From positions 248,001 through 312,000 of the IMG/VR virus record IMGVR_UViG_3300032770_000001: 64,000 nt of DNA; one strand, 5' to 3'. Positions within the stretch are counted from its first letter, which is position 1; each line of letters starts with the position of its first letter. Of the stretch, positions 22,365-57,275 are shown in pieces. A program made the position numbers and the translations under genes. A model generated the notes under the pieces. It searched no databases. It was not told the DNA's origin and worked only from the letters and a program-made list of their open reading frames with translations.

Positions 22365-22396
22365 TTGACAGTTTTCCGACTTTCTGGTATTAGTAT
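22365..22396 (+). promoter_or_regulatory. sigma70-like promoter of tRNA array 1
   Basis: TTGACA 22365-22370, then TGGTATTAGTAT; nearly the same element precedes array 2. Confidence 0.75.
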
Positions 22397-22418
22397 AGTA
22401 GTAGGAACACAAACTCGA

Positions 22419-22496
22419 ATGGTTCGCATACACGCATTATCGTCGTCCTCAAGTAGCTCCCGTAGCGGGAGCGGCGGCGTTGGTGTGTGCTTGTAA
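22419..22496 (+). CDS. attenuator leader peptide 1 (MVRIHALSSSSSSSRSGSGGVGVCL)
   Basis: 25-codon ORF with ATA, TTA and the run TCG TCG TCC TCA AGT AGC TCC; overlaps alternative hairpins; matches downstream tRNAs. Confidence 0.85.
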   Translation: MVRIHALSSSSSSSRSGSGGVGVCL

Positions 22497-22532
22497 ACAC
22501 TTGAAAACAAGCAAGTAAGAAACACCGATGAA

Positions 22533-22566
22533 GCCGCCTAGAAACTTGGGCGGCATTTGTGTTTTT
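22533..22566 (+). terminator. attenuator terminator of tRNA array 1
   Basis: GCCGCCTAG-AAAC-TTGGGCGGC followed by ATTTGTGTTTTT. Confidence 0.8.
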
Positions 22567-22602
22567 AGGGTAGTTTAATGGTATAGCTGGTATTGATATA
22601 CC

Positions 22603-22965
22603 ATGGAGTGCCAATATCACAGATGCGGTAAGGAACTCATCGGCAGGCAGACGAAGTTCTGCTCTCCGAACTGTAAGAACAAAAACAATGTTCACCTTAG
22701 CCGTAGGCGGATGAAGCGTCGAGCAGTCGATTATCTCGGCGGAAAGTGTGTTGGGTGTGGGTATTCCAGATGTCTGGATGCCTTGGAATTCCACCACAAC
22801 TGTGATGAAAAAGAGACTGAAGTTTCAAAGATGATCGCCAATAACAGACCTTGGGAGGTCATCTTACAAGAATTGAAAAAGTGTGAGCTTAGGTGCGCCA
22901 ATTGCCACGCTGAGTATCATACATTAGGTGAGTTGGGAGAGAGGCTTATCCCGCTCGGTTGCTAA
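22603..22965 (+). CDS. HNH endonuclease (free-standing homing type)
   Basis: GGKCVGCGYSRCLDALEFHH...ELKKCELRCANCHAEYH; stop lies in the tRNA-Ser(GCT) anticodon loop. Confidence 0.85.
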   Translation: MECQYHRCGKELIGRQTKFCSPNCKNKNNVHLSRRRMKRRAVDYLGGKCVGCGYSRCLDALEFHHNCDEKETEVSKMIANNRPWEVILQELKKCELRCANCHAEYHTLGELGERLIPLGC

Positions 22966-23419: not shown

Positions 23420-23424
23420 AGTTT

Positions 23425-23519
23425 GGGGGAGAGCACTGGCTGTGCGGCTGGGCCTTATAAACCCGGAGTAGCTCCTGATTAGAGCAGACGGTGGGGTTCG
23501 AATCCCTACTCCCCTACCA
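23425..23519 (+). tRNA. atypical tRNA-Ile(TAT)
   Basis: GGGGGAG/CTCCCCT-A-CCA; loop CTTATAA; 5-nt D loop; long V arm. Confidence 0.75.
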
Positions 23520-34753: not shown

Positions 34754-35520
34754 TGTGCTTTTTCGCGATGAAGCCGGAACCGAAGGGCGATGATCCCATC
34801 CCCTACACCTATTGTCCGCACATCATGACTGAGTTTGAAGGACGGCCTGTGCTCTGGTCGCGGACTGGCACCATCGGCATGTGCTCGTGCTGCTGGCATT
34901 ACATGTGCGGCAAGTGCTACAGCCATCACCCGAAGCCGGAGAACGCGCCTCACGGGATTCTCCCTTGCCATTGGGATACGCGACAGTTTATATTCATGGT
35001 TGAACGCTTCGGTGATCTACCTCAGAGCGAACAAAGCAGAATTTGGCGAGACCCAGTTGCACGGGCAAAGTTTTACCACGAGACGCCGATAAGGGGCTGA
35101 TTATGAATTCTTTTGGTCTTAGATTCATTGCTTTTGTGTTCGTGTTAGCCGTGCTGTTCGGTGCCATCAACGCCAATCGACTTTATGAGTCGCACGTTAC
35201 GACGACAGCGACGGGACGTGAACCCGTCCAGCCAGAGCCATACAAAGCGGTGTCCTCGATCTACGTTTGGCATCAACCCCTGAAGGACATGCCCGTGGGC
35301 GCACAGGGCTGTTACGAGGTTTTCTACACGTCAAGCGGAGAGCCGTTTGTTTGGGCGTGGGAAGATTCAGACCCGATCTGCCACACTATCGTCCGGCGTG
35401 ATAAGGACGGCTGGCACGCCACACAGCAGGGACCGACAGACCATGAGCAAATCACCGGGTATGTGTCGGTCAGACAGGCTGAGGGCATCCCGATCTCGTA
35501 AAAAATTTTTTCGATAGTTG

Positions 35521-35553
35521 TTGACAAACCGACTACCGATATGGTATTAGTAG
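35521..35553 (+). promoter_or_regulatory. sigma70-like promoter of tRNA array 2
   Basis: TTGACA 35521-35526, then TGGTATTAGTAG; AT-rich sequence upstream. Confidence 0.75.
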
Positions 35554-35572
35554 TAGTGAGCTTGAGAAATTC

Positions 35573-35668
35573 ATGACCTTCATGACAGCCAAATCGAGCC
35601 GAAAGCATCAGCGCCGGAATAATCGCTGGTTCGGCACGGGTCTGTTCTCTGAAGGGTGGGGCGCTTAA
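35573..35668 (+). CDS. attenuator leader peptide 2 (MTFMTAKSSRKHQRRNNRWFGTGLFSEGWGA)
   Basis: control run AAA..CGA AAG CAT CAG CGC CGG AAT AAT CGC TGG matches downstream Lys/Arg/His/Gln/Asn/Trp tRNAs; alternative start at ATG 35582. Confidence 0.82.
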   Translation: MTFMTAKSSRKHQRRNNRWFGTGLFSEGWGA

Positions 35669-35695
35669 AGCCTAGAAACCCAAGAGATTAACGAG

Positions 35696-35729
35696 ACCCG
35701 GAGCCAAAAGGCTTCGGGTTTTTTGTTTT
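35696..35729 (+). terminator. attenuator terminator of tRNA array 2
   Basis: ACCCGGAGCC-AAAA-GGCTTCGGGT followed by TTTTTGTTTT. Confidence 0.9.
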
Positions 35730-35746
35730 GGTCTTTGAAAATTTAT

Positions 35747-35825
35747 AGGGGCGTAAGACTATCTGGCGTCGTCGGCTGGTCTCCAAAACCATGCAGTGGG
35801 GGTTCAAATCCCCCCGCCCCTGCCA
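35747..35825 (+). tRNA. tRNA-Trp(CCA)
   Basis: AGGGGCG/CGCCCCT-G-CCA; loop CTCCAAA. Confidence 0.9.
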
Positions 35826-35826
35826 T

Positions 35827-35914
35827 TGGGCGATGGTGTAATTGGCAACACACTTGGCTCTGAACCAAGGGACTGATAAAGCTTGTGGAGGTTCGAGTCC
35901 TCCTCGCCCAGCCA
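35827..35914 (+). tRNA. tRNA-Gln(CTG) with extended variable region
   Basis: TGGGCGA/TCGCCCA-G-CCA; CTTGG-CTCTGAA-CCAAG. Confidence 0.88.
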
Positions 35915-36028
35915 ATATTGCAATAGGACTGGATACTTGCCGAGAAAGGGTACGGCGTTCGCGTCGGAGAGTATTTCGGGTGTCGAGAAGCCAGCCTTAC
36001 GGCTACAATCCGTGAAAGCCGTTTCGAT

Positions 36029-36105
36029 GGTGGGCGTAGTTCAACTGGTAGAACGCAGGATTGTGGCTCCTGTAGTTGCGGGTTCGAATCCCGTCGCCCA
36101 CCCCA
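36029..36105 (+). tRNA. tRNA-His(GTG), encoded G-1
   Basis: CAGGA-TTGTGGC-TCCTG; G-1:C73. Confidence 0.95.
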
Positions 36106-36116
36106 AGTTTAGATGT

Positions 36117-36192
36117 GGTGTCATTAGCCAAGAGGTAAGGCAAGAGGTTGTGGCCCTCTCATGCGTCGGTTCGATCCCGACATGACACCCCA
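36117..36192 (+). tRNA. tRNA-His(GTG) second copy, encoded G-1
   Basis: AGAGG-TTGTGGC-CCTCT; G-1:C73. Confidence 0.92.
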
Positions 36193-36230
36193 AGTTTTGA
36201 GGAGATAGCAGATTGGATCGACATAGTAAC

Positions 36231-36306
36231 GGGCTTATAGCTCAGAAGGAAGAGCACTGGAATCCGAATCCAGAGGTCGGCGGTTCGAGTCCGCCTAAGC
36301 CCTCCA
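36231..36306 (+). tRNA. tRNA-Arg(CCG)
   Basis: CTGGA-ATCCGAA-TCCAG; GGGCTTA/TAAGCCC. Confidence 0.92.
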
Positions 36307-36317
36307 GAGTTTTGCAA

Positions 36318-36464
36318 GTGATCGCTGGCAGTCCGATTGATTTTGACTGCCCTCTTTGCGGCAAGCCGAAAGGCGTACCCTGCAAAGTCAGGATCGTGGA
36401 AGAGCAGATCGTAGAGATCGACTTCCATCTTGACCGCAAAAAGTTGACAAGATTGTCCGCATAG
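36318..36464 (+). CDS. small zinc-finger protein ending inside tRNA-Arg(ACG)
   Basis: CPLC..PC..H; the TAG stop is tRNA positions 8-10. Confidence 0.5.
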   Translation: MIAGSPIDFDCPLCGKPKGVPCKVRIVEEQIVEIDFHLDRKKLTRLSA

Positions 36465-36531
36465 CTCAACTGGATAGAGCGCGTGCCTACGAAGCATGAG
36501 GTTGGGGGTTCGAGTCCCTCTGTGGACACCA
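36455..36531 (+). tRNA. tRNA-Arg(ACG)
   Basis: CGTGC-CTACGAA-GCATG; canonical D and T arms. Confidence 0.95.
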
Positions 36532-36536
36532 TATCA

Positions 36537-36611
36537 GGGGTGTATTGTCGGTTCGAATCCGGCTGGTCGTGGGTTTCACGATCATAGGCTCAAATGGTCA
36601 ACCAACGCCCC
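36537..36611 (+). ncRNA. circularly permuted tRNA-like RNA (YrlA/Y-RNA-like module)
   Basis: closing stem GGGGTGT/ACGCCCC; T arm GTCGG-TTCGAAT-CCGGC; loop-closed acceptor stem TGGTCGT/ACGATCA; D-like arm. Confidence 0.7.
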
Positions 36612-36622
36612 GTCGTTTTTAT

Positions 36623-36709
36623 GCCTCCGTGTCGGCAACTGGATGCCACCCTCGCTACGAACGAGGAGCCCGAAAGGGAATGCAGGTTCGAGTCCTGTCG
36701 GGGGTTCCA
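36623..36709 (+). tRNA. atypical tRNA-Arg(ACG) with long variable arm
   Basis: CCTCG-CTACGAA-CGAGG; V arm CCC-GAAA-GGG; TCCA end. Confidence 0.82.
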
Positions 36710-36920
36710 TTTTGAAGTATTGAAGAGTATGAGCAGACTTGAAGAGTTGTACGCGCAGTTGGAAAAGACGGAGCCCGGATCGCCGGAATCGAAAACAATA
36801 GCGGAAAAGATTCTGGAAGAGGTCTTCGGCGGCGTCCCGGAAGGGAAAGAAGGCGCGACTGTTCATGCTCCGGGTTGTAAGTGTGGTTGGTGTTTGATGG
36901 GAGATACAAAGTTTTAACAC

Positions 36921-37007
36921 TGGGATGTAGACCGTAATTGGTAGCGGGCGTGGCTGTTAACCACGTGCAGAAATGCCTTGTAGGTTCGAGCCCTACCGTC
37001 CCAGCCA
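36921..37007 (+). tRNA. tRNA-Asn(GTT) with long variable arm
   Basis: CGTGG-CTGTTAA-CCACG; V arm GCA-GAAA-TGC. Confidence 0.88.
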
Positions 37008-37013
37008 GATTTT

Positions 37014-37089
37014 TCCGGGGTAGCTCAGCGGTAGTAGCGTCCGGCTGTTAACCGGATGGTCGCAGGTTCGATCCCTGCCCCCGGAGCCA
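37014..37089 (+). tRNA. tRNA-Asn(GTT)
   Basis: TCCGG-CTGTTAA-CCGGA; canonical. Confidence 0.95.
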
Positions 37090-37346
37090 AGATGTAAACG
37101 TGCGGTTGGGGAGCGGAGCCCTCGGCGAGGGTGGAAAGCCTAAACTCCGCTCCCCGCTGTGGGGGCTGGGTCGCCTGTATAGCGCCACTCCTCATGCTTA
37201 GGGCACGGGATGTCGTTTTCGAAGACTTCTAGGATTGGAATTGGGATGTGGCACTCGCAAAGCAGGATCGCAAAGTAGCGTTCCTCACCGTCTTCGGTTT
37301 TTGCGTAGGCACCACAGACCTGCATACTTAAAGAATACCAAAGTTT

Positions 37347-37423
37347 GGGTGCGTCGTATAGCGGCTGATTATATTCCCCTCTTAAGGGACTTGACGTTGG
37401 TTCAAATCCAACCGCACCCACCA
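37347..37423 (+). tRNA. tRNA-Lys(CTT)
   Basis: GGGTGCG/CGCACCC-A-CCA; loop CTCTTAA. Confidence 0.9.
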
Positions 37424-37443
37424 AGTTTGTGGTATTGTGTAGT

Positions 37444-37605
37444 ATGGCTTTTACCAAGGAACAACTCGAAGCACTGGCTGCTCCATTGCGGCATGTGATT
37501 TTCGACAAGGACACCATCGCGTACCTTGAATGGGTTAGAGATAACCCAAACGAGTGGGCACAGATGATGCAGCAGCGCGATAAAGAACGACAATTGGGGG
37601 GTTAG
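37444..37605 (+). CDS. 53-aa hypothetical protein ending inside tRNA-Lys(CTT)
   Basis: MAFTKEQLEALAAPLRH...QLGG; the TAG stop is tRNA positions 8-10; TGG-TATTGT element just upstream. Confidence 0.55.
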   Translation: MAFTKEQLEALAAPLRHVIFDKDTIAYLEWVRDNPNEWAQMMQQRDKERQLGG

Positions 37606-37671
37606 CTCAACTGGCAGAGCAGGGGCCTCTTAAGCCTCAGGTTGCGGGTTCGACTCCCGTGCCCCTCACCA
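37596..37671 (+). tRNA. tRNA-Lys(CTT) second copy
   Basis: GGGGC-CTCTTAA-GCCTC; canonical D and T arms. Confidence 0.93.
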
Positions 37672-37941
37672 AATCTAGTTAGGAGTTTGCTATGTTCGGT
37701 CCAGCGGAAGATGTACCGGGCGAATGCAATGCTCGGTTGGAGATCGGCGACGATTATGGCGACAATGTCGCCACGATGCGTTGCCAGCGGGAGCCGGGTC
37801 ATCCGGATCGGCACCGCGAAGAATACGTGGACGTGGACAAAGGTGTTGTCACCGTCCAGTGGGGCAATCAGCCCGAATAAGATTGGAACGTGTACACGTT
37901 CCATCGTCCTCGGCTCGGCGACGGTCGGGTAGCGGGGACAG

Positions 37942-38012
37942 CGTACCGTAGCTTAGTTGGCAGAGCGTCCGCCTTGGAAGCGGAAGACGCAGGTTCGAAT
38001 CCTGTCGGCTTT
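37942..38012 (+). pseudogene. tRNA-Pro(TGG) pseudogene
   Basis: intact D, anticodon (TCCGC-CTTGGAA-GCGGA) and T arms, but the acceptor stem pairs only 3 bp and there is no CCA. Confidence 0.7.
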
Positions 38013-38320
38013 GTGTTGGCTCCGGCAGTACCTCGACGGAGGGAATAGTCCGGAGCCGCTTACGTTTATGATACCAGCGTGTGTGACATGCACCGATTGC
38101 GGGTTCGCACCATACGGGATGTACATGGTGACGAACGAGCTTTGGGCAGCGGCGGGACTGAAGCGTGACGATAACGTTTGTCCTCTCTGTCTGGAGAAGC
38201 GTATCGGGCGACCGCTGACACAAGAGGATTTTACGCCGTTCCCGTGCAATAGGATCATCCGAGCCCACGGGGTTCAGGCGCACATTGATTTTTGGAAGCC
38301 TTTAATAGAGGAAGATTATC

Positions 38321-38866
38321 GTGAACGACACATTGGTACTTGACATGAACTGGCAGCCTGTCGGCTTCTGCTCTTGGCAGAACGCCGTGAAGCTCTGGTA
38401 CGAAGGGCGTGCTCAGGTCATCAAGGAAGACGAGGCGGGCCGCGTGCTGCGTTCTCCATCTTTCACGATGGGTATGCCGCGAGTCATTGTCGTTCGTAAC
38501 GCTTGGACTCGTCGTCGCCGTCAGGCTGTGCCGTTCAGCCGTCGCAACATTGCTGTTCGTGACGACTCGACGTGCCAGTATTGCGGCAAGATACTGCACA
38601 CCCACCAGTACACGCTGGATCACGTACTGCCGCGTTCGCAGGGTGGTGTGTCGTCTTGGACGAACCTTGTTCTGGCTTGCATCCGTTGCAACAAGTACAA
38701 GGCCGGACAGACGCCGGAGCAGGCAGGCATGACTCTGTTGAAGAAGCCTGTCGAACCGAAGTCCGATGATCCGAAGTACAACTTCAAGCTGCACATCCGC
38801 CACGTCCGTGCCGAGTGGAAGGAATGGTCAAGCTGGCTCTACTGGAACATCGAATTGGATCGTTAA
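38321..38866 (+). CDS. HNH endonuclease (McrA-like)
   Basis: SRRNIAVRDDSTCQYCG...TLDHVLPRSQGG..SWTNLVLACIRCNKYK. Confidence 0.92.
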   Translation: MNDTLVLDMNWQPVGFCSWQNAVKLWYEGRAQVIKEDEAGRVLRSPSFTMGMPRVIVVRNAWTRRRRQAVPFSRRNIAVRDDSTCQYCGKILHTHQYTLDHVLPRSQGGVSSWTNLVLACIRCNKYKAGQTPEQAGMTLLKKPVEPKSDDPKYNFKLHIRHVRAEWKEWSSWLYWNIELDR

Positions 38867-41047: not shown

Positions 41048-41123
41048 GACCCCGTAGCTCAGATGGAAGAGCGGTGCGGTCCTAACGCACAGGTCGAGAG
41101 TTCGAATCTCTCCGGGGTCTCCA
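41048..41123 (+). tRNA. tRNA-Arg(CCT)
   Basis: GTGCG-GTCCTAA-CGCAC; GACCCCG/CGGGGTC. Confidence 0.92.
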
Positions 41124-42344: not shown

Positions 42345-42428
42345 GGGGGCGTAGTCGGGGGGCTCTTCTAAAGCCTTAGCCGTAAACCGGAACTGCGAAT
42401 GCGAGTTCGAATCTCGCCGCCCCTTCCA
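42345..42428 (+). tRNA. D-armless tRNA-Arg(TCT)-like RNA
   Basis: GGGGGCG/CGCCCCT-T-CCA; GGGCT-CTTCTAA-AGCCT; canonical T arm; only 7-8 nt in place of the D arm. Confidence 0.7.
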
Positions 42429-42439
42429 TATTTTTCTTT

Positions 42440-42514
42440 GGGAGTATCGTCTAATGTCAAGACCCCCGCCTTTTAAGCGGGCCGATCTCGGTTCGAATCC
42501 GGGTGCTCCCACCA
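42440..42514 (+). tRNA. tRNA-Lys(TTT)
   Basis: CCCGC-CTTTTAA-GCGGG; ACCA end. Confidence 0.92.
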
Positions 42515-56919: not shown

Positions 56920-57275
56920 CCGTCTCTTAAGTTAGAGGCGAAGCCCGATCTGTTAATCTCTCGACCAACTGACTAAACACACGGGTGGAGTCTCTAAGGG
57001 GAGCACTGGATATGGAAATCCAATCGCTCCCCTTCTCTTTTTTGGTATTAACCGGGTATGAACACCATATTCCGGTGCGCAGAGCACAAACGATTCGAGA
57101 CACAACGAGAAGCCGAAGAGGAACTCCCCAAGATCGCCCTGCACGGCATGAGAAAGGGCGGCGGATCGTGGCGTTTACTTAAGGCATTCCAGTGCGGTGA
57201 CCACTGGCATGTGGGCCGAGATTGGAAGAGCCGCAAAAAACCCTCGTAAGTAGCTGAAAACACGCCAATAAAAAC

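What the first reader, a model, noticed from the sequence alone, without database searches (positions are those of the whole stretch)
35573..37671. Attenuator 2: RKHQRRNNRW leader ahead of Trp, Gln, His, Arg, Asn and Lys tRNAs
Ten consecutive codons (CGA AAG CAT CAG CGC CGG AAT AAT CGC TGG) use only the six amino acids whose intact tRNAs follow. They are readable by the encoded anticodons ACG (assuming I34 editing), CTT, GTG, CTG, CCG, GTT and CCA. Protector: GCCGAA/TTCGGC and CAGCG/CGCTG over the control codons. Antiterminator: CGGGTCT 35637-43 with AGACCCG 35694-700, plus TCTCT/AGAGA and GGGT/ACCC. Terminator: 35696-35729. Six inputs is more than classical multivalent attenuators such as ilvGMEDA use. 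AGA and AGG codons are absent from the leader, and the Arg(CCT) and Arg(TCT) genes lie more than 5 kb away near their own -10-like boxes.
Basis: partly seen in the sequence, partly recalled or inferred. Interest (0 to 1): 0.94.

Follow-up and report, generated by a model that had tools for sequence, protein, structure and literature searches.

The report
Codon-sensing attenuator ahead of phage tRNAs
A huge phage places a short translated leader, made of exactly the codons that its downstream tRNA genes read, in front of a switchable terminator, so it probably makes these tRNAs only when ribosomes run short of them; unrelated jumbo phages have the same design.

Summary
The window is part of a 455-kb T4-like megaphage. 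It contains a sigma-70-like promoter (35521-35550) and a 31-codon ORF (35573-35668). Codons 10-19 of that ORF (35600-35629) are all readable by the tRNAs that follow: Trp, Gln, His, Arg-CCG, Arg-ACG, Asn, Lys-CTT. A strong intrinsic terminator (35693-35729) ends 17 nt before tRNA-Trp. This 10-codon run is the longest of its kind in all six frames of the window. A stable hairpin (35633-35705, z about -3.6) competes with the terminator's 5' arm. In ribosome-masked folding it forms when a ribosome sits on the first eight control codons. Two diverged relatives keep the ORF, with in-frame indels only. They also keep the control codons, the antiterminator and the terminator, with compensatory changes. 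A second leader in the window (22365-22566, Leu/Ser codons) precedes the Ser/Leu tRNA array and has the same promoter type. A blind screen found non-homologous analogues in Caulobacter phages CcrBL9/CcrSC and Tunturiibacter phage Tunturi_5. It found none in T5, RSP15 or V45v66. I read this as classical leader-peptide attenuation applied to viral tRNA arrays. I found no published description. All evidence is computational.

The parts
35521..35550 (+). Sigma-70-like promoter: TTGACA, 18-nt spacer, TG-extended -10 (TGGTATTAG)
   Evidence: It is the best promoter match in 35000-38600, at 10 of 12 plus the TG extension. The same TTGACA...TGGTATTAGTA..GTAGTAG pattern occurs only twice in the 455-kb phage, both times ahead of a leader. 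The extended -10 is conserved in L008 and L029.
35573..35668 (+). Leader ORF of 31 codons plus a TAA stop
   Evidence: Translation is. Homologous ORFs occur in L008 (29 aa) and L029 (30 aa, P0004). All indels inside the ORF are multiples of three; those outside are not. The SD match is weak here at -2.8 kcal/mol. L029 has GGAG 7 nt before the ATG.
35600..35629 (+). Ten control codons (R K H Q R R N N R W), each readable by a tRNA of the downstream array
   Evidence: It is the longest such run in six frames of the window. It is 90% identical to L008, more than tRNA-Trp at 64%. RKHQR(R)NNRW is kept in all three lineages, with one synonymous AAT-to-AAC change.
35584..35646 (+). Anti-antiterminator ('protector'): a hairpin over the control codons, plus pairing of 35584-96 with 35637-46
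   Evidence: It appears in the MFE of the full leader and in co-transcriptional prefixes; dG is -21.8. It is not conserved pair by pair. In L008 and L029 the same region-2 bases pair instead with the 5'UTR/SD region.
35633..35705 (+). Antiterminator hairpin: GGC/GCC, CGGGTCT/AGACCCG, GT/AC, TCTCT/AGAGA, GGGT/ACCC and an apical stem with the TAA stop in its loop
   Evidence: dG is -32.9 and z is -3.55, with 0 of 200 shuffles as stable. The L008 homologue has dG -28.1 and z -3.87. It covers 10 of 12 nt of the terminator's 5' arm, and only 3 of 500 shuffled upstream sequences stabilise that arm as much. It forms with the ribosome A site on CGA through the second AAT (8 of 10 control codons), weakens at CGC (5 of its 7 core pairs remain), and its pairing with the terminator arm is gone at TGG.
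35693..35729 (+). Intrinsic terminator: 13-bp stem, AAAA loop, TTTTTTGTTTT
   Evidence: Supported. dG is -21.5 and z is -5.8. Compensatory changes: G.U to C-G in L008 and L029, and A-U to G-C in L029. It is one of very few strong terminators on the coding strand of the window.
35747..35822 (+). tRNA-Trp(CCA), the first gene after the terminator
   Evidence: Rfam tRNA, 41.3 bits. ARAGORN calls the homologues in L008 and L029.
35827..37671 (+). tRNA array interleaved with small ORFs: Gln CTG, His GTG x2, Arg CCG, Arg ACG x2, Asn GTT x2, Lys CTT x2
   Evidence: The order is the same in L008.
22365..22566 (+). Sister element, 'leader 1'. It has the same promoter type and a 25-codon ORF at 22419-22496 containing ATA, TTA and TCG TCG TCC TCA AGT AGC TCC. 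Its antiterminator is GGCGGC/GCCGCC and its terminator is 22533-22566. It lies ahead of Ser GCT, GGA, TGA, CGA and Leu TAA tRNAs.
   Evidence: z is -5.6. The close strain L014 has a 100% identical leader directly abutting its Ser tRNAs, while the upstream gene carries 38 mismatches.

Best explanation
This is a ribosome-mediated (leader-peptide) transcription attenuator that controls a phage tRNA operon.

**Proposed mechanism.**
1. Transcription starts about 16 nt before the leader ATG.
2. A ribosome translates the 31-codon leader while RNA polymerase moves on.
3. If charged Arg(ACG/CCG), Lys(CTT), His, Gln(CTG), Asn or Trp tRNA is scarce, the ribosome stalls inside 35600-35629. This keeps the upstream protector unwound and leaves 35633-35650 free.
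4. That segment pairs with 35683-35705 as it emerges and forms the antiterminator. The terminator cannot form, and polymerase reads into Trp, Gln, His, Arg, Asn and Lys tRNAs.
5. If these tRNAs are plentiful, the ribosome runs through region 2 to the stop codon, which lies in the apical loop of the antiterminator. This blocks the antiterminator, so the 35693-35722 hairpin plus T run ends the transcript at about 170 nt.

The net effect is negative feedback: the array is made on demand for exactly the codons it decodes.

**Shown by sequence and computation:** the ORF, the codon/anticodon match, the alternative structures, their conservation, and recurrence in other phages.

**Inferred:** the transcription start, translation of the leader, kinetic coupling, and the physiological trigger.
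For: 1. **Codon match.** All 10 control codons are cognate to the array. It is the longest such run in six frames of the window. Fixed-window screens give p of about 3e-5 in the window (Trp not counted) and 3.5e-6 in L008.
2. **Specificity.** The second leader, with the same promoter type, carries Leu/Ser (and ATA) codons and precedes the Ser/Leu array. This promoter pattern occurs only at these two sites in the 455-kb genome.
3. **Conservation.** L008 is about 74% identical in nucleotides and L029 has a different upstream neighbour. Both keep the ORF frame, the RKHQR(R)NNRW codons, region 2, the stop codon in the apical loop, and a terminator directly before tRNA-Trp. Terminator pairs covary, and the A-to-G change at 35696 is compatible with both the antiterminator and the terminator.
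4. **Structure.** Antiterminator z is -3.55 and -3.87, and terminator z is -5.8. Ribosome-masked folding shows the antiterminator only while the A site is on the control codons in the window, L008 and L029. The same holds for leader 1.
5. **Convergence.** A blind screen finds non-homologous leaders with a terminator and antiterminator in three other phages. CcrBL9 has RQFVRQIQ.VRVN ahead of Val, Ile, Gln, Asn, Arg and Phe tRNAs. CcrSC scores 12 of 12. Tunturi_5 has LCLSSYCLSSS ahead of Leu, Cys, Tyr and Ser tRNAs. T5, RSP15 and V45v66 give no hit.
6. **No competing promoter.** No comparable promoter lies between the terminator and the tRNAs.
Against: - There is no transcript, ribosome or reporter data.
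- The Shine-Dalgarno match in the window is no better than random (-2.8 kcal/mol).
- At equilibrium on the full transcript the terminator stays competitive even with a stalled ribosome: P(terminator) is 0.4-0.8. The switch therefore has to be kinetic.
- Stalls at the last two control codons (CGC, TGG) would partly cover region 2 in the window.
- The protector is not conserved pair by pair.
- Only three homologous sequences are available, so covariation rests on a few pairs.
- A weak extended -10 box at about 37430 could feed the last tRNA-Lys independently.
- Several array tRNAs have atypical long variable arms, and one of them (Arg ACG, 36623-36709) is not recognised by the Rfam tRNA model.
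Confidence: 0.8

Rival explanations
1. The leader does sense codons, but its output is not intrinsic termination. Ribosome stalling or passage could instead control processing or stability of the tRNA precursor, or Rho access, with the hairpins acting as RNase or Rho-blocking structures.
For: The conserved AU-rich spacer TCTTTGAAAATTTA between the T run and tRNA-Trp could be an RNase E-type site. The long hairpin could be an RNase III substrate. At equilibrium the terminator is hard to beat.
Against: The hairpin plus T run is a textbook intrinsic terminator in all three homologues and in leader 1, CcrBL9 and Tunturi_5. The competing helix always includes part of the terminator's 5' arm, even where the terminator sequence has changed.
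Confidence: 0.1
2. The element is an independent small gene, either a basic peptide or a small RNA, with its own promoter and terminator. The terminator is constitutive, and the tRNAs are expressed from other promoters or by leak-through.
For: The unit is self-contained, with promoter, ORF and terminator. The RKHQRRNNRW peptide resembles arginine-rich RNA-binding motifs. A weak internal -10-like box exists at about 37430.
Against: This reading does not explain why the codons match the anticodons at the synonymous level (AAG not AAA, CAG not CAA, no AGA/AGG). It does not explain why leader 1, CcrBL9, CcrSC and Tunturi_5 have quite different peptides that each match their own array. The N- and C-terminal residues vary freely while the control codons do not. 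There is no room for a promoter between the T run and tRNA-Trp (17 nt).
Confidence: 0.06
3. It is a chance ORF and chance complementarity lying in the 3' region of the upstream gene.
For: Short ORFs and hairpins are common.
Against: The run is the window-wide maximum, with about 0.008 expected (my arithmetic). An unbiased fixed-window screen recovers it and its analogues while three other phages give nothing. It is conserved with in-frame indels and compensatory pairs. Only 3 of 500 shuffles match the antiterminator statistic.
Confidence: 0.02

Closest known systems
Leader-peptide transcription attenuators of amino-acid operons (trpL, hisL, pheL, thrL, ilvL/ivbL of enterobacteria)
   Same: Both have a promoter-proximal short ORF with a run of regulatory codons. 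Both have mutually exclusive protector, antiterminator and terminator hairpins, an intrinsic terminator before the regulated genes, and a stalled ribosome that selects the antiterminator (established textbook model; features tested).
   Different: The regulated genes here are tRNAs, not biosynthetic enzymes, so the sensed molecule is the operon's own product. Six amino acids and seven anticodons are sampled, against one to three in the classical cases. The setting is a phage. The stop codon lies in the antiterminator's apical loop. There is no sequence homology, and no Rfam leader family matches.
pheM leader of the pheST operon (an aminoacyl-tRNA synthetase gene under leader-peptide attenuation)
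   Same: Attenuation by cognate codons is used to control a component of the translation apparatus rather than a biosynthetic pathway (from my own knowledge of the E. coli literature).
   Different: The product there is a synthetase, not tRNAs, and a single amino acid is sensed. I checked E. coli pheU and pheV: these tRNA genes have a promoter directly upstream and no leader.
T-box riboswitches
   Same: Both sense tRNA status to control read-through of an intrinsic terminator through an antiterminator.
   Different: A T-box binds one uncharged tRNA directly through a specifier codon and the T-box sequence, without a ribosome. There is no T-box match here. Here there is a conserved translated ORF that samples many codons.
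Analogous leaders found here in Caulobacter phages CcrBL9/CcrSC and Tunturiibacter phage Tunturi_5
   Same: Each has a short ORF whose codon run matches the amino acids of the tRNA array that follows. Each is followed by a strong terminator whose 5' arm can pair with a segment just after the run.
   Different: The peptides and RNA sequences are unrelated, the tRNA sets differ, and the CcrBL9 leader is probably leaderless mRNA. The deposited annotation shows no such feature there, and the Tunturi_5 paper has no occurrence of 'attenuat' or 'leader'.

Membership tests
Leader-peptide (ribosome-mediated) transcription attenuator | Short ORF with a start codon close to the transcription start, under selection as a reading frame | tested here: met
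   The ATG is conserved in the window, L008 and L029. Indels inside the ORF are 3 nt, while those outside are 1, 4 or 5 nt. SD is weak in the window, and GGAG is present in L029.
Leader-peptide (ribosome-mediated) transcription attenuator | Cluster of regulatory codons that correspond to the regulated function | tested here: met
   10 of 10 codons are cognate to the downstream anticodons. It is the window-wide maximum run and is conserved in the relatives.
Leader-peptide (ribosome-mediated) transcription attenuator | Intrinsic terminator between the leader ORF and the regulated genes | tested here: met
   A 13-bp GC-rich stem plus T run at 35693-35729, ending 17 nt before tRNA-Trp.
Leader-peptide (ribosome-mediated) transcription attenuator | Antiterminator that is mutually exclusive with the terminator and is favoured when a ribosome occupies the control codons | tested here: met
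   The hairpin at 35633-35705 has z -3.55 and overlaps the terminator's 5' arm.
Leader-peptide (ribosome-mediated) transcription attenuator | Anti-antiterminator (1:2) pairing that gives termination when the leader is not stalled | tested here: inconclusive
   A protector exists in each sequence, but with different partners: the ORF 5' part in the window, and the 5'UTR/SD in L008 and L029.
Leader-peptide (ribosome-mediated) transcription attenuator | Read-through responds to the supply of the cognate charged tRNAs | not testable with these tools
   This needs reporter, Term-seq or in vitro coupled assays.
Leader-peptide (ribosome-mediated) transcription attenuator | Regulated genes are amino-acid biosynthesis or synthetase genes, as in all described members known to me | tested here: not met
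   The downstream genes are 11 tRNAs plus small ORFs. I therefore file this as a new variant, not an ordinary member.
T-box riboswitch | Match to the T-box leader model, with stem I, specifier loop and T-box sequence | tested here: not met
   No Rfam family other than tRNA matches in 35480-35840, even at E up to 10.

The most novel reading that the evidence does not exclude
Leader-peptide attenuators that sample exactly the codons decoded by the downstream genes may be a general, convergently evolved way for large phages to run their tRNA arrays on demand. They could act as sensors of host tRNA shortage. Such shortage could come from rare host codons, host shut-off, or anticodon-nuclease defences that cut tRNAs such as Lys, Arg, His and Asn. 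The replacement tRNAs would then be switched on only when ribosomes actually stall.
Probability: 0.45. Interest if true: 0.92.

Novelty: new variant of a known kind. Interest (0 to 1): 0.88.

Why it matters
Phage tRNA genes are usually discussed only in terms of codon usage or escape from tRNA-cleaving defences. How their expression is controlled is largely unknown. If this reading holds, phages use the oldest known RNA switch, leader-peptide attenuation, in a new role: the leader measures decoding speed at the very codons the operon's tRNAs serve, closing a feedback loop on tRNA supply.

- It would be the first attenuator whose product is the sensed molecule.
- It would have the highest known number of inputs, at six amino acids and seven anticodons.
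- It offers a simple bioinformatic signature for predicting which tRNAs are co-transcribed and which codons limit translation during infection.
- Because cultured phages (CcrBL9/CcrSC on Caulobacter vibrioides CB15, Tunturi_5) carry analogues, the idea can be tested directly.

Tried and rejected
- **Rfam.** Gathering and permissive scans found no family for the leader, only tRNAs.
- **Searches for relatives.** IMG/VR and JGI metagenome scans by neighbour proteins, the promoter pattern, the tRNA-Trp 3' half and the antiterminator pattern returned only the source phage. L005, a distant nucleotidyltransferase relative, has no tRNAs. A GTDB scan with the tRNA-Trp anticodon arm gave only bacterial MAG contigs from lineages unrelated to this phage, and I did not pursue them. 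blastn and tblastn against GenBank phages found no close relative; there were only tRNA-level hits and 28-33% rIIA matches.
- **Recalled precedent.** I remembered that E. coli tRNA-Phe genes pheU/pheV have a Phe-rich leader. The sequences show a promoter directly upstream and no leader, so I dropped this.
- **Literature.** Eight full-text searches found no description of leader-peptide control of tRNA genes. The Tunturi_5 paper does not mention it.
- **Failed or weak computations.** The antiterminator-stabilisation statistic is not significant for L008 (114 of 500) because its protector is strong; the hairpin z-score is significant. MAFFT alignments are not structure-aware in the apical region, so the apparent 'broken' pairs there are alignment artefacts. 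I compared independent folds instead.
- **Self-correction.** I first misread the tRNA at 42345 as an amber suppressor; it is Arg(UCU).
Full report
**Context.** The window is identical to part of IMGVR_UViG_3300032770_000001, a 455,708-bp phage contig. All long ORFs are on the + strand and GC is about 54%. PHROG matches include rIIA, rIIB, NAD-dependent DNA ligase, a nucleotidyltransferase and a major head protein. It is therefore a T4-like megaphage with no close cultured relative; rIIA is at most 28-33% identical to known phages. ARAGORN finds 19 tRNAs in three clusters, and Rfam adds several that ARAGORN misses.

**The observation.** The region contains these features:
- TTGACA (35521), an 18-nt spacer and a TG-extended -10 box, TGGTATTAG.
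- A 31-codon ORF at 35573-35668.
- A 13-bp GC-rich hairpin with a T run at 35693-35729.
- tRNA-Trp(CCA) at 35747-35822, starting 17 nt after the T run. ARAGORN misses it, but Rfam scores it at 41 bits.
- Then Gln CTG, His GTG x2, Arg CCG, Arg ACG x2, Asn GTT x2 and Lys CTT x2.

Codons 10-19 of the ORF (35600-35629) are CGA AAG CAT CAG CGC CGG AAT AAT CGC TGG. With standard wobble and A34-to-I34 for the ACG anticodon, the array reads 11 codons, and all ten leader codons are among them. This 10-codon run is the longest in all six frames of the window; the next longest is 7. The codon set has a frequency of 0.19-0.21, so about 0.008 such runs are expected window-wide (my arithmetic). Synonymous choices also fit: AAG is used rather than AAA, CAG rather than CAA, and there is no AGA or AGG. 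The tRNAs for those excluded codons lie 5-7 kb away: Lys TTT at 42440 and 42517, Arg CCT at 41048, and Arg TCT at 42345. Several control codons are the rarer synonyms in this phage (CGA, CGG, CAT, AAT).

**Structures.** The full leader folds into a protector plus the terminator, at -62.3 kcal/mol. The segment 35633-35705 forms a long hairpin on its own. Its helices are GGC/GCC, CGGGTCT/AGACCCG, GT/AC, TCTCT/AGAGA, GGGT/ACCC and an apical stem with the TAA stop in its loop.
- Hairpin stability: dG is -32.9 and z is -3.55, with 0 of 200 shuffles as stable.
- Overlap: it uses 10 of the 12 nt of the terminator's 5' arm. Only 3 of 500 dinucleotide shuffles of the upstream RNA stabilise that arm as much.
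- Balance: forcing the antiterminator on the full transcript costs only 2.9 kcal/mol.
- Folding order: prefix folding shows region 2 first pairing upstream, then switching to the antiterminator once 35694-35705 is made, then switching to protector plus terminator once the 3' arm is made.
- Stalled ribosome: I masked a 30-nt footprint at each codon. On the transcript that ends at the terminator's 5' arm, the antiterminator forms when the A site is on CGA through the second AAT. It weakens at CGC and is lost at TGG.
- Equilibrium: on the complete transcript the terminator stays competitive, with P 0.4-0.8. The switch must therefore be kinetic, as in classical attenuators.

**Relatives.** The upstream 130-aa protein led to L008 and L009 (ENA and Logan contigs; 67% protein identity, about 74% nucleotide identity). 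An exhaustive HMMER search with the 31-aa peptide found one further called ORF, P0004, whose contig is L029. L029 has a different upstream neighbour, and its leader is followed by tRNA-Trp and tRNA-His. The three leaders compare as follows:
- **Reading frame.** All three start with ATG. They vary freely at the N- and C-termini and keep R K H Q R (R) N N R W. The differences within the run are loss of one Arg codon and one synonymous AAT-to-AAC change.
- **Indels.** Inside the ORF they are multiples of three. Outside it they are 1, 4 or 5 nt.
- **Conservation by segment.** The control codons and region 2 are the best conserved, at 90% against L008. tRNA-Trp itself is 64%.
- **Terminator.** All alignable pairs are kept. 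G.U becomes C-G in L008 and L029, A-U becomes G-C in L029, and there are one-sided changes. In L029 the terminator is shortened and largely different in sequence, yet its 5' arm still contains a stretch complementary to the conserved region 2 (GGTCTGTTC with GAACAGGCC). The A-to-G change at the position equivalent to 35696 fits both helices: U.G in the antiterminator and G-C in the terminator.
- **Independent folds.** L008 gives the same hairpin architecture, with different apical stem sequences and the stop codon again in the loop (z -3.87).
- **Ribosome masking.** L029 shows the antiterminator for every A-site position up to TGG, and none beyond it.
- **Protector.** It is not conserved pair by pair. 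In L008 and L029, region 2 pairs with the 5'UTR/SD segment instead.

**A second leader in the same window.** At 22365-22566 the same promoter type precedes a 25-codon ORF (22419-22496). The pattern TTGACA...TGGTATTAGTA..GTAGTAG occurs only twice in the whole 455-kb genome. The ORF contains ATA, TTA, TCG TCG TCC TCA AGT AGC TCC, AGC and AGC. A hairpin plus T run follows at 22533-22566. Downstream lie Ser GCT, Ser GGA, Ser TGA, Ser CGA and Leu TAA, plus a weak tRNA-like element with a TAT anticodon loop. The 8-codon run is again the window-wide maximum for that codon set. Here the Ser codons themselves (TCGTCGTCC) pair with GGCGGCG, which can alternatively pair with the terminator's GCCGCC arm. 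In masked folds the antiterminator forms for every A-site position up to the last codon of the Ser run and disappears immediately after it. In the close strain L014 the leader is 100% identical while the preceding gene has 38 mismatches. There the Ser tRNAs follow the terminator directly, so the HNH endonuclease ORF at 22594-22925 in the window is an insertion. The two leaders are specific to their own arrays (my count from the sequences):

| Leader | Codons cognate to its own array | Codons cognate to the other array |
|---|---|---|
| Leader 1 (25 codons) | 11 of 25 | 3 of 25 |
| Leader 2 (31 codons) | 11 of 31 | 3 of 31 |

**Generality.** I wrote a blind screen. For any fetched locus it takes 12-codon windows lying at most 450 nt upstream of a tRNA and scores them against the codons read by the tRNAs in the next 2.5 kb (earlier variants). 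It recovers both leaders here and the L008 leader. It also finds the following:
- **Caulobacter phage CcrBL9.** TTGACA-17-TATAAG is followed 7 nt later by an ATG, so this is probably a leaderless mRNA. The ORF contains R Q F V R Q I Q S V R V N R, and a strong terminator follows. Its 5' arm is complementary to a segment just after the run. The array is Val GAC, Ile GAT, Val CAC, Gln TTG, Asn GTT, Arg ACG and Phe GAA.
- **Caulobacter phage CcrSC.** The single non-cognate Ser codon of CcrBL9 is a cognate Phe codon here, giving 12 of 12.
- **CcrBL9 gp149.** This annotated 39-aa ORF is rich in P, T, K, L, H, A, S and W and lies ahead of exactly those tRNAs.
- **Tunturiibacter phage Tunturi_5.** An ORF contains L C L S S Y C L S S S L S L S. 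It is followed by a GCCCCAGC/GCTGGGGC terminator 12 nt before Leu CAA, Cys, Leu GAG, Leu CAG, Tyr, Leu TAA and three Ser tRNAs. A second candidate, PATAGNPAGQQGT, lies ahead of Asn, Gln, Gly, Thr, Pro, His and Ala tRNAs.
- **Negatives.** Phages T5, RSP15 and V45v66 gave nothing above expectation. The screen does not produce hits automatically.

These analogues share no sequence with the element studied here. That argues for convergence on one design.

**Mechanism.** The best reading is classical ribosome-mediated attenuation, with the tRNA array as the regulated product.
- **Shown by sequence and computation:** the ORF and its conservation as a frame, the codon/anticodon match, the mutually exclusive helices and their conservation, the position of the terminator, and the recurrence.
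- **Inferred:** the transcription start (about 35557), translation of the leader, polymerase-ribosome coupling, and the physiological signal.

The logic is a negative feedback. Slow decoding of the array's own codons opens the gate, and fast decoding closes it. Whether the relevant shortage is rare host tRNAs, host shut-off or tRNA-cleaving defence cannot be decided here.

**Weaknesses.**
- There are no expression data.
- The SD match in the window is weak.
- Equilibrium favours the terminator.
- The last two control codons sit close to region 2.
- The protector partners vary.
- Only three homologues are available.
- A weak TGGTATTGT box at about 37430 might drive the last tRNA-Lys separately.
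- Several tRNAs have unusual long variable arms.

**Comparison and novelty.** The element works like the trp, his, phe and ilv leaders and meets their structural criteria. Its regulated genes are tRNAs, it samples six amino acids, and it is viral. It matches no Rfam leader or T-box model. E. coli tRNA-Phe genes, which I had recalled as a precedent, have no leader. Eight full-text literature searches and the Tunturi_5 genome paper gave no description of such control. Subscription-only papers could not be searched. I rate it a new variant of a known kind, with high interest.

Noticed in passing
window 22365-22566: A second attenuator-like leader. It has the same promoter type, an ORF with ATA, TTA and seven consecutive Ser codons that use five different Ser codons, a GGCGGC/GCCGCC antiterminator and a terminator. 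It lies ahead of the Ser x4/Leu TAA tRNA array.
   Followed up: yes
window 22594-22925; L014:740-760: An HNH endonuclease ORF sits between leader 1's terminator and the Ser tRNAs. In the close strain L014 it is absent and the tRNAs abut the terminator, so it looks like a homing-endonuclease insertion inside the operon.
   Followed up: partly
window 35827-35914, 36623-36709, 36921-37007, 42345-42425: tRNAs for Gln(CTG), Arg(ACG), Asn(GTT) and Arg(TCT) carry long variable arms of the class II type, which is normal only for Leu, Ser and Tyr in bacteria. Most have a normal-length twin nearby. From reading the Asn copy against its L008 homologue, the anticodon stem and variable arm appear to change in a compensatory way. 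I did not align this formally, and their charging identity is unknown.
   Followed up: partly
window 23424-23516: A tRNA-like element with a long arm and the anticodon loop CU-UAU-AA (it would read ATA, a codon present in leader 1). It scores only 20 bits against the tRNA-Sec model and ARAGORN does not call it.
   Followed up: partly
window 37946-38008; L008:5322-5418: A strong partial tRNA match (55 bits, model positions 5-66) without a convincing acceptor stem. By my reading the anticodon loop gives UGG here and UUG in L008.
   Followed up: no
L023:17860-18060 (CcrBL9), L028:13175-13375 (CcrSC), L023:10403-10522, L024:3682-3838 and L024:11697-11861 (Tunturi_5): Non-homologous short ORFs whose codon runs match the tRNA arrays that follow them. 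Most have a terminator and a competing helix. None is annotated as regulatory in the records.
   Followed up: partly
window 37430-37438: TGGTATTGT, an extended -10-like box resembling the leader promoters. It lies ahead of the small ORF 37443-37605 and the last tRNA-Lys, and is conserved in L008. It may be an internal promoter.
   Followed up: no
window 57000-57050: A strong terminator-like hairpin (about -21.5 kcal/mol) is followed immediately by another TGGTATTA box. It may be another transcription-unit boundary of the same promoter class.
   Followed up: no
window 36313-36450, 36730-36917, 37443-37605, 37692-37880: Small ORFs, several with Cys pairs, are interleaved with the tRNAs and conserved in L008. 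Any read-through transcript would therefore be a mixed mRNA-tRNA precursor.
   Followed up: no
L026 (phage T5, 28-41 kb of the record): The T5 tRNA region is annotated with several 'stable RNAs with unknown functions' and many promoters directly ahead of tRNAs. My screen found no cognate-codon leader there.
   Followed up: partly
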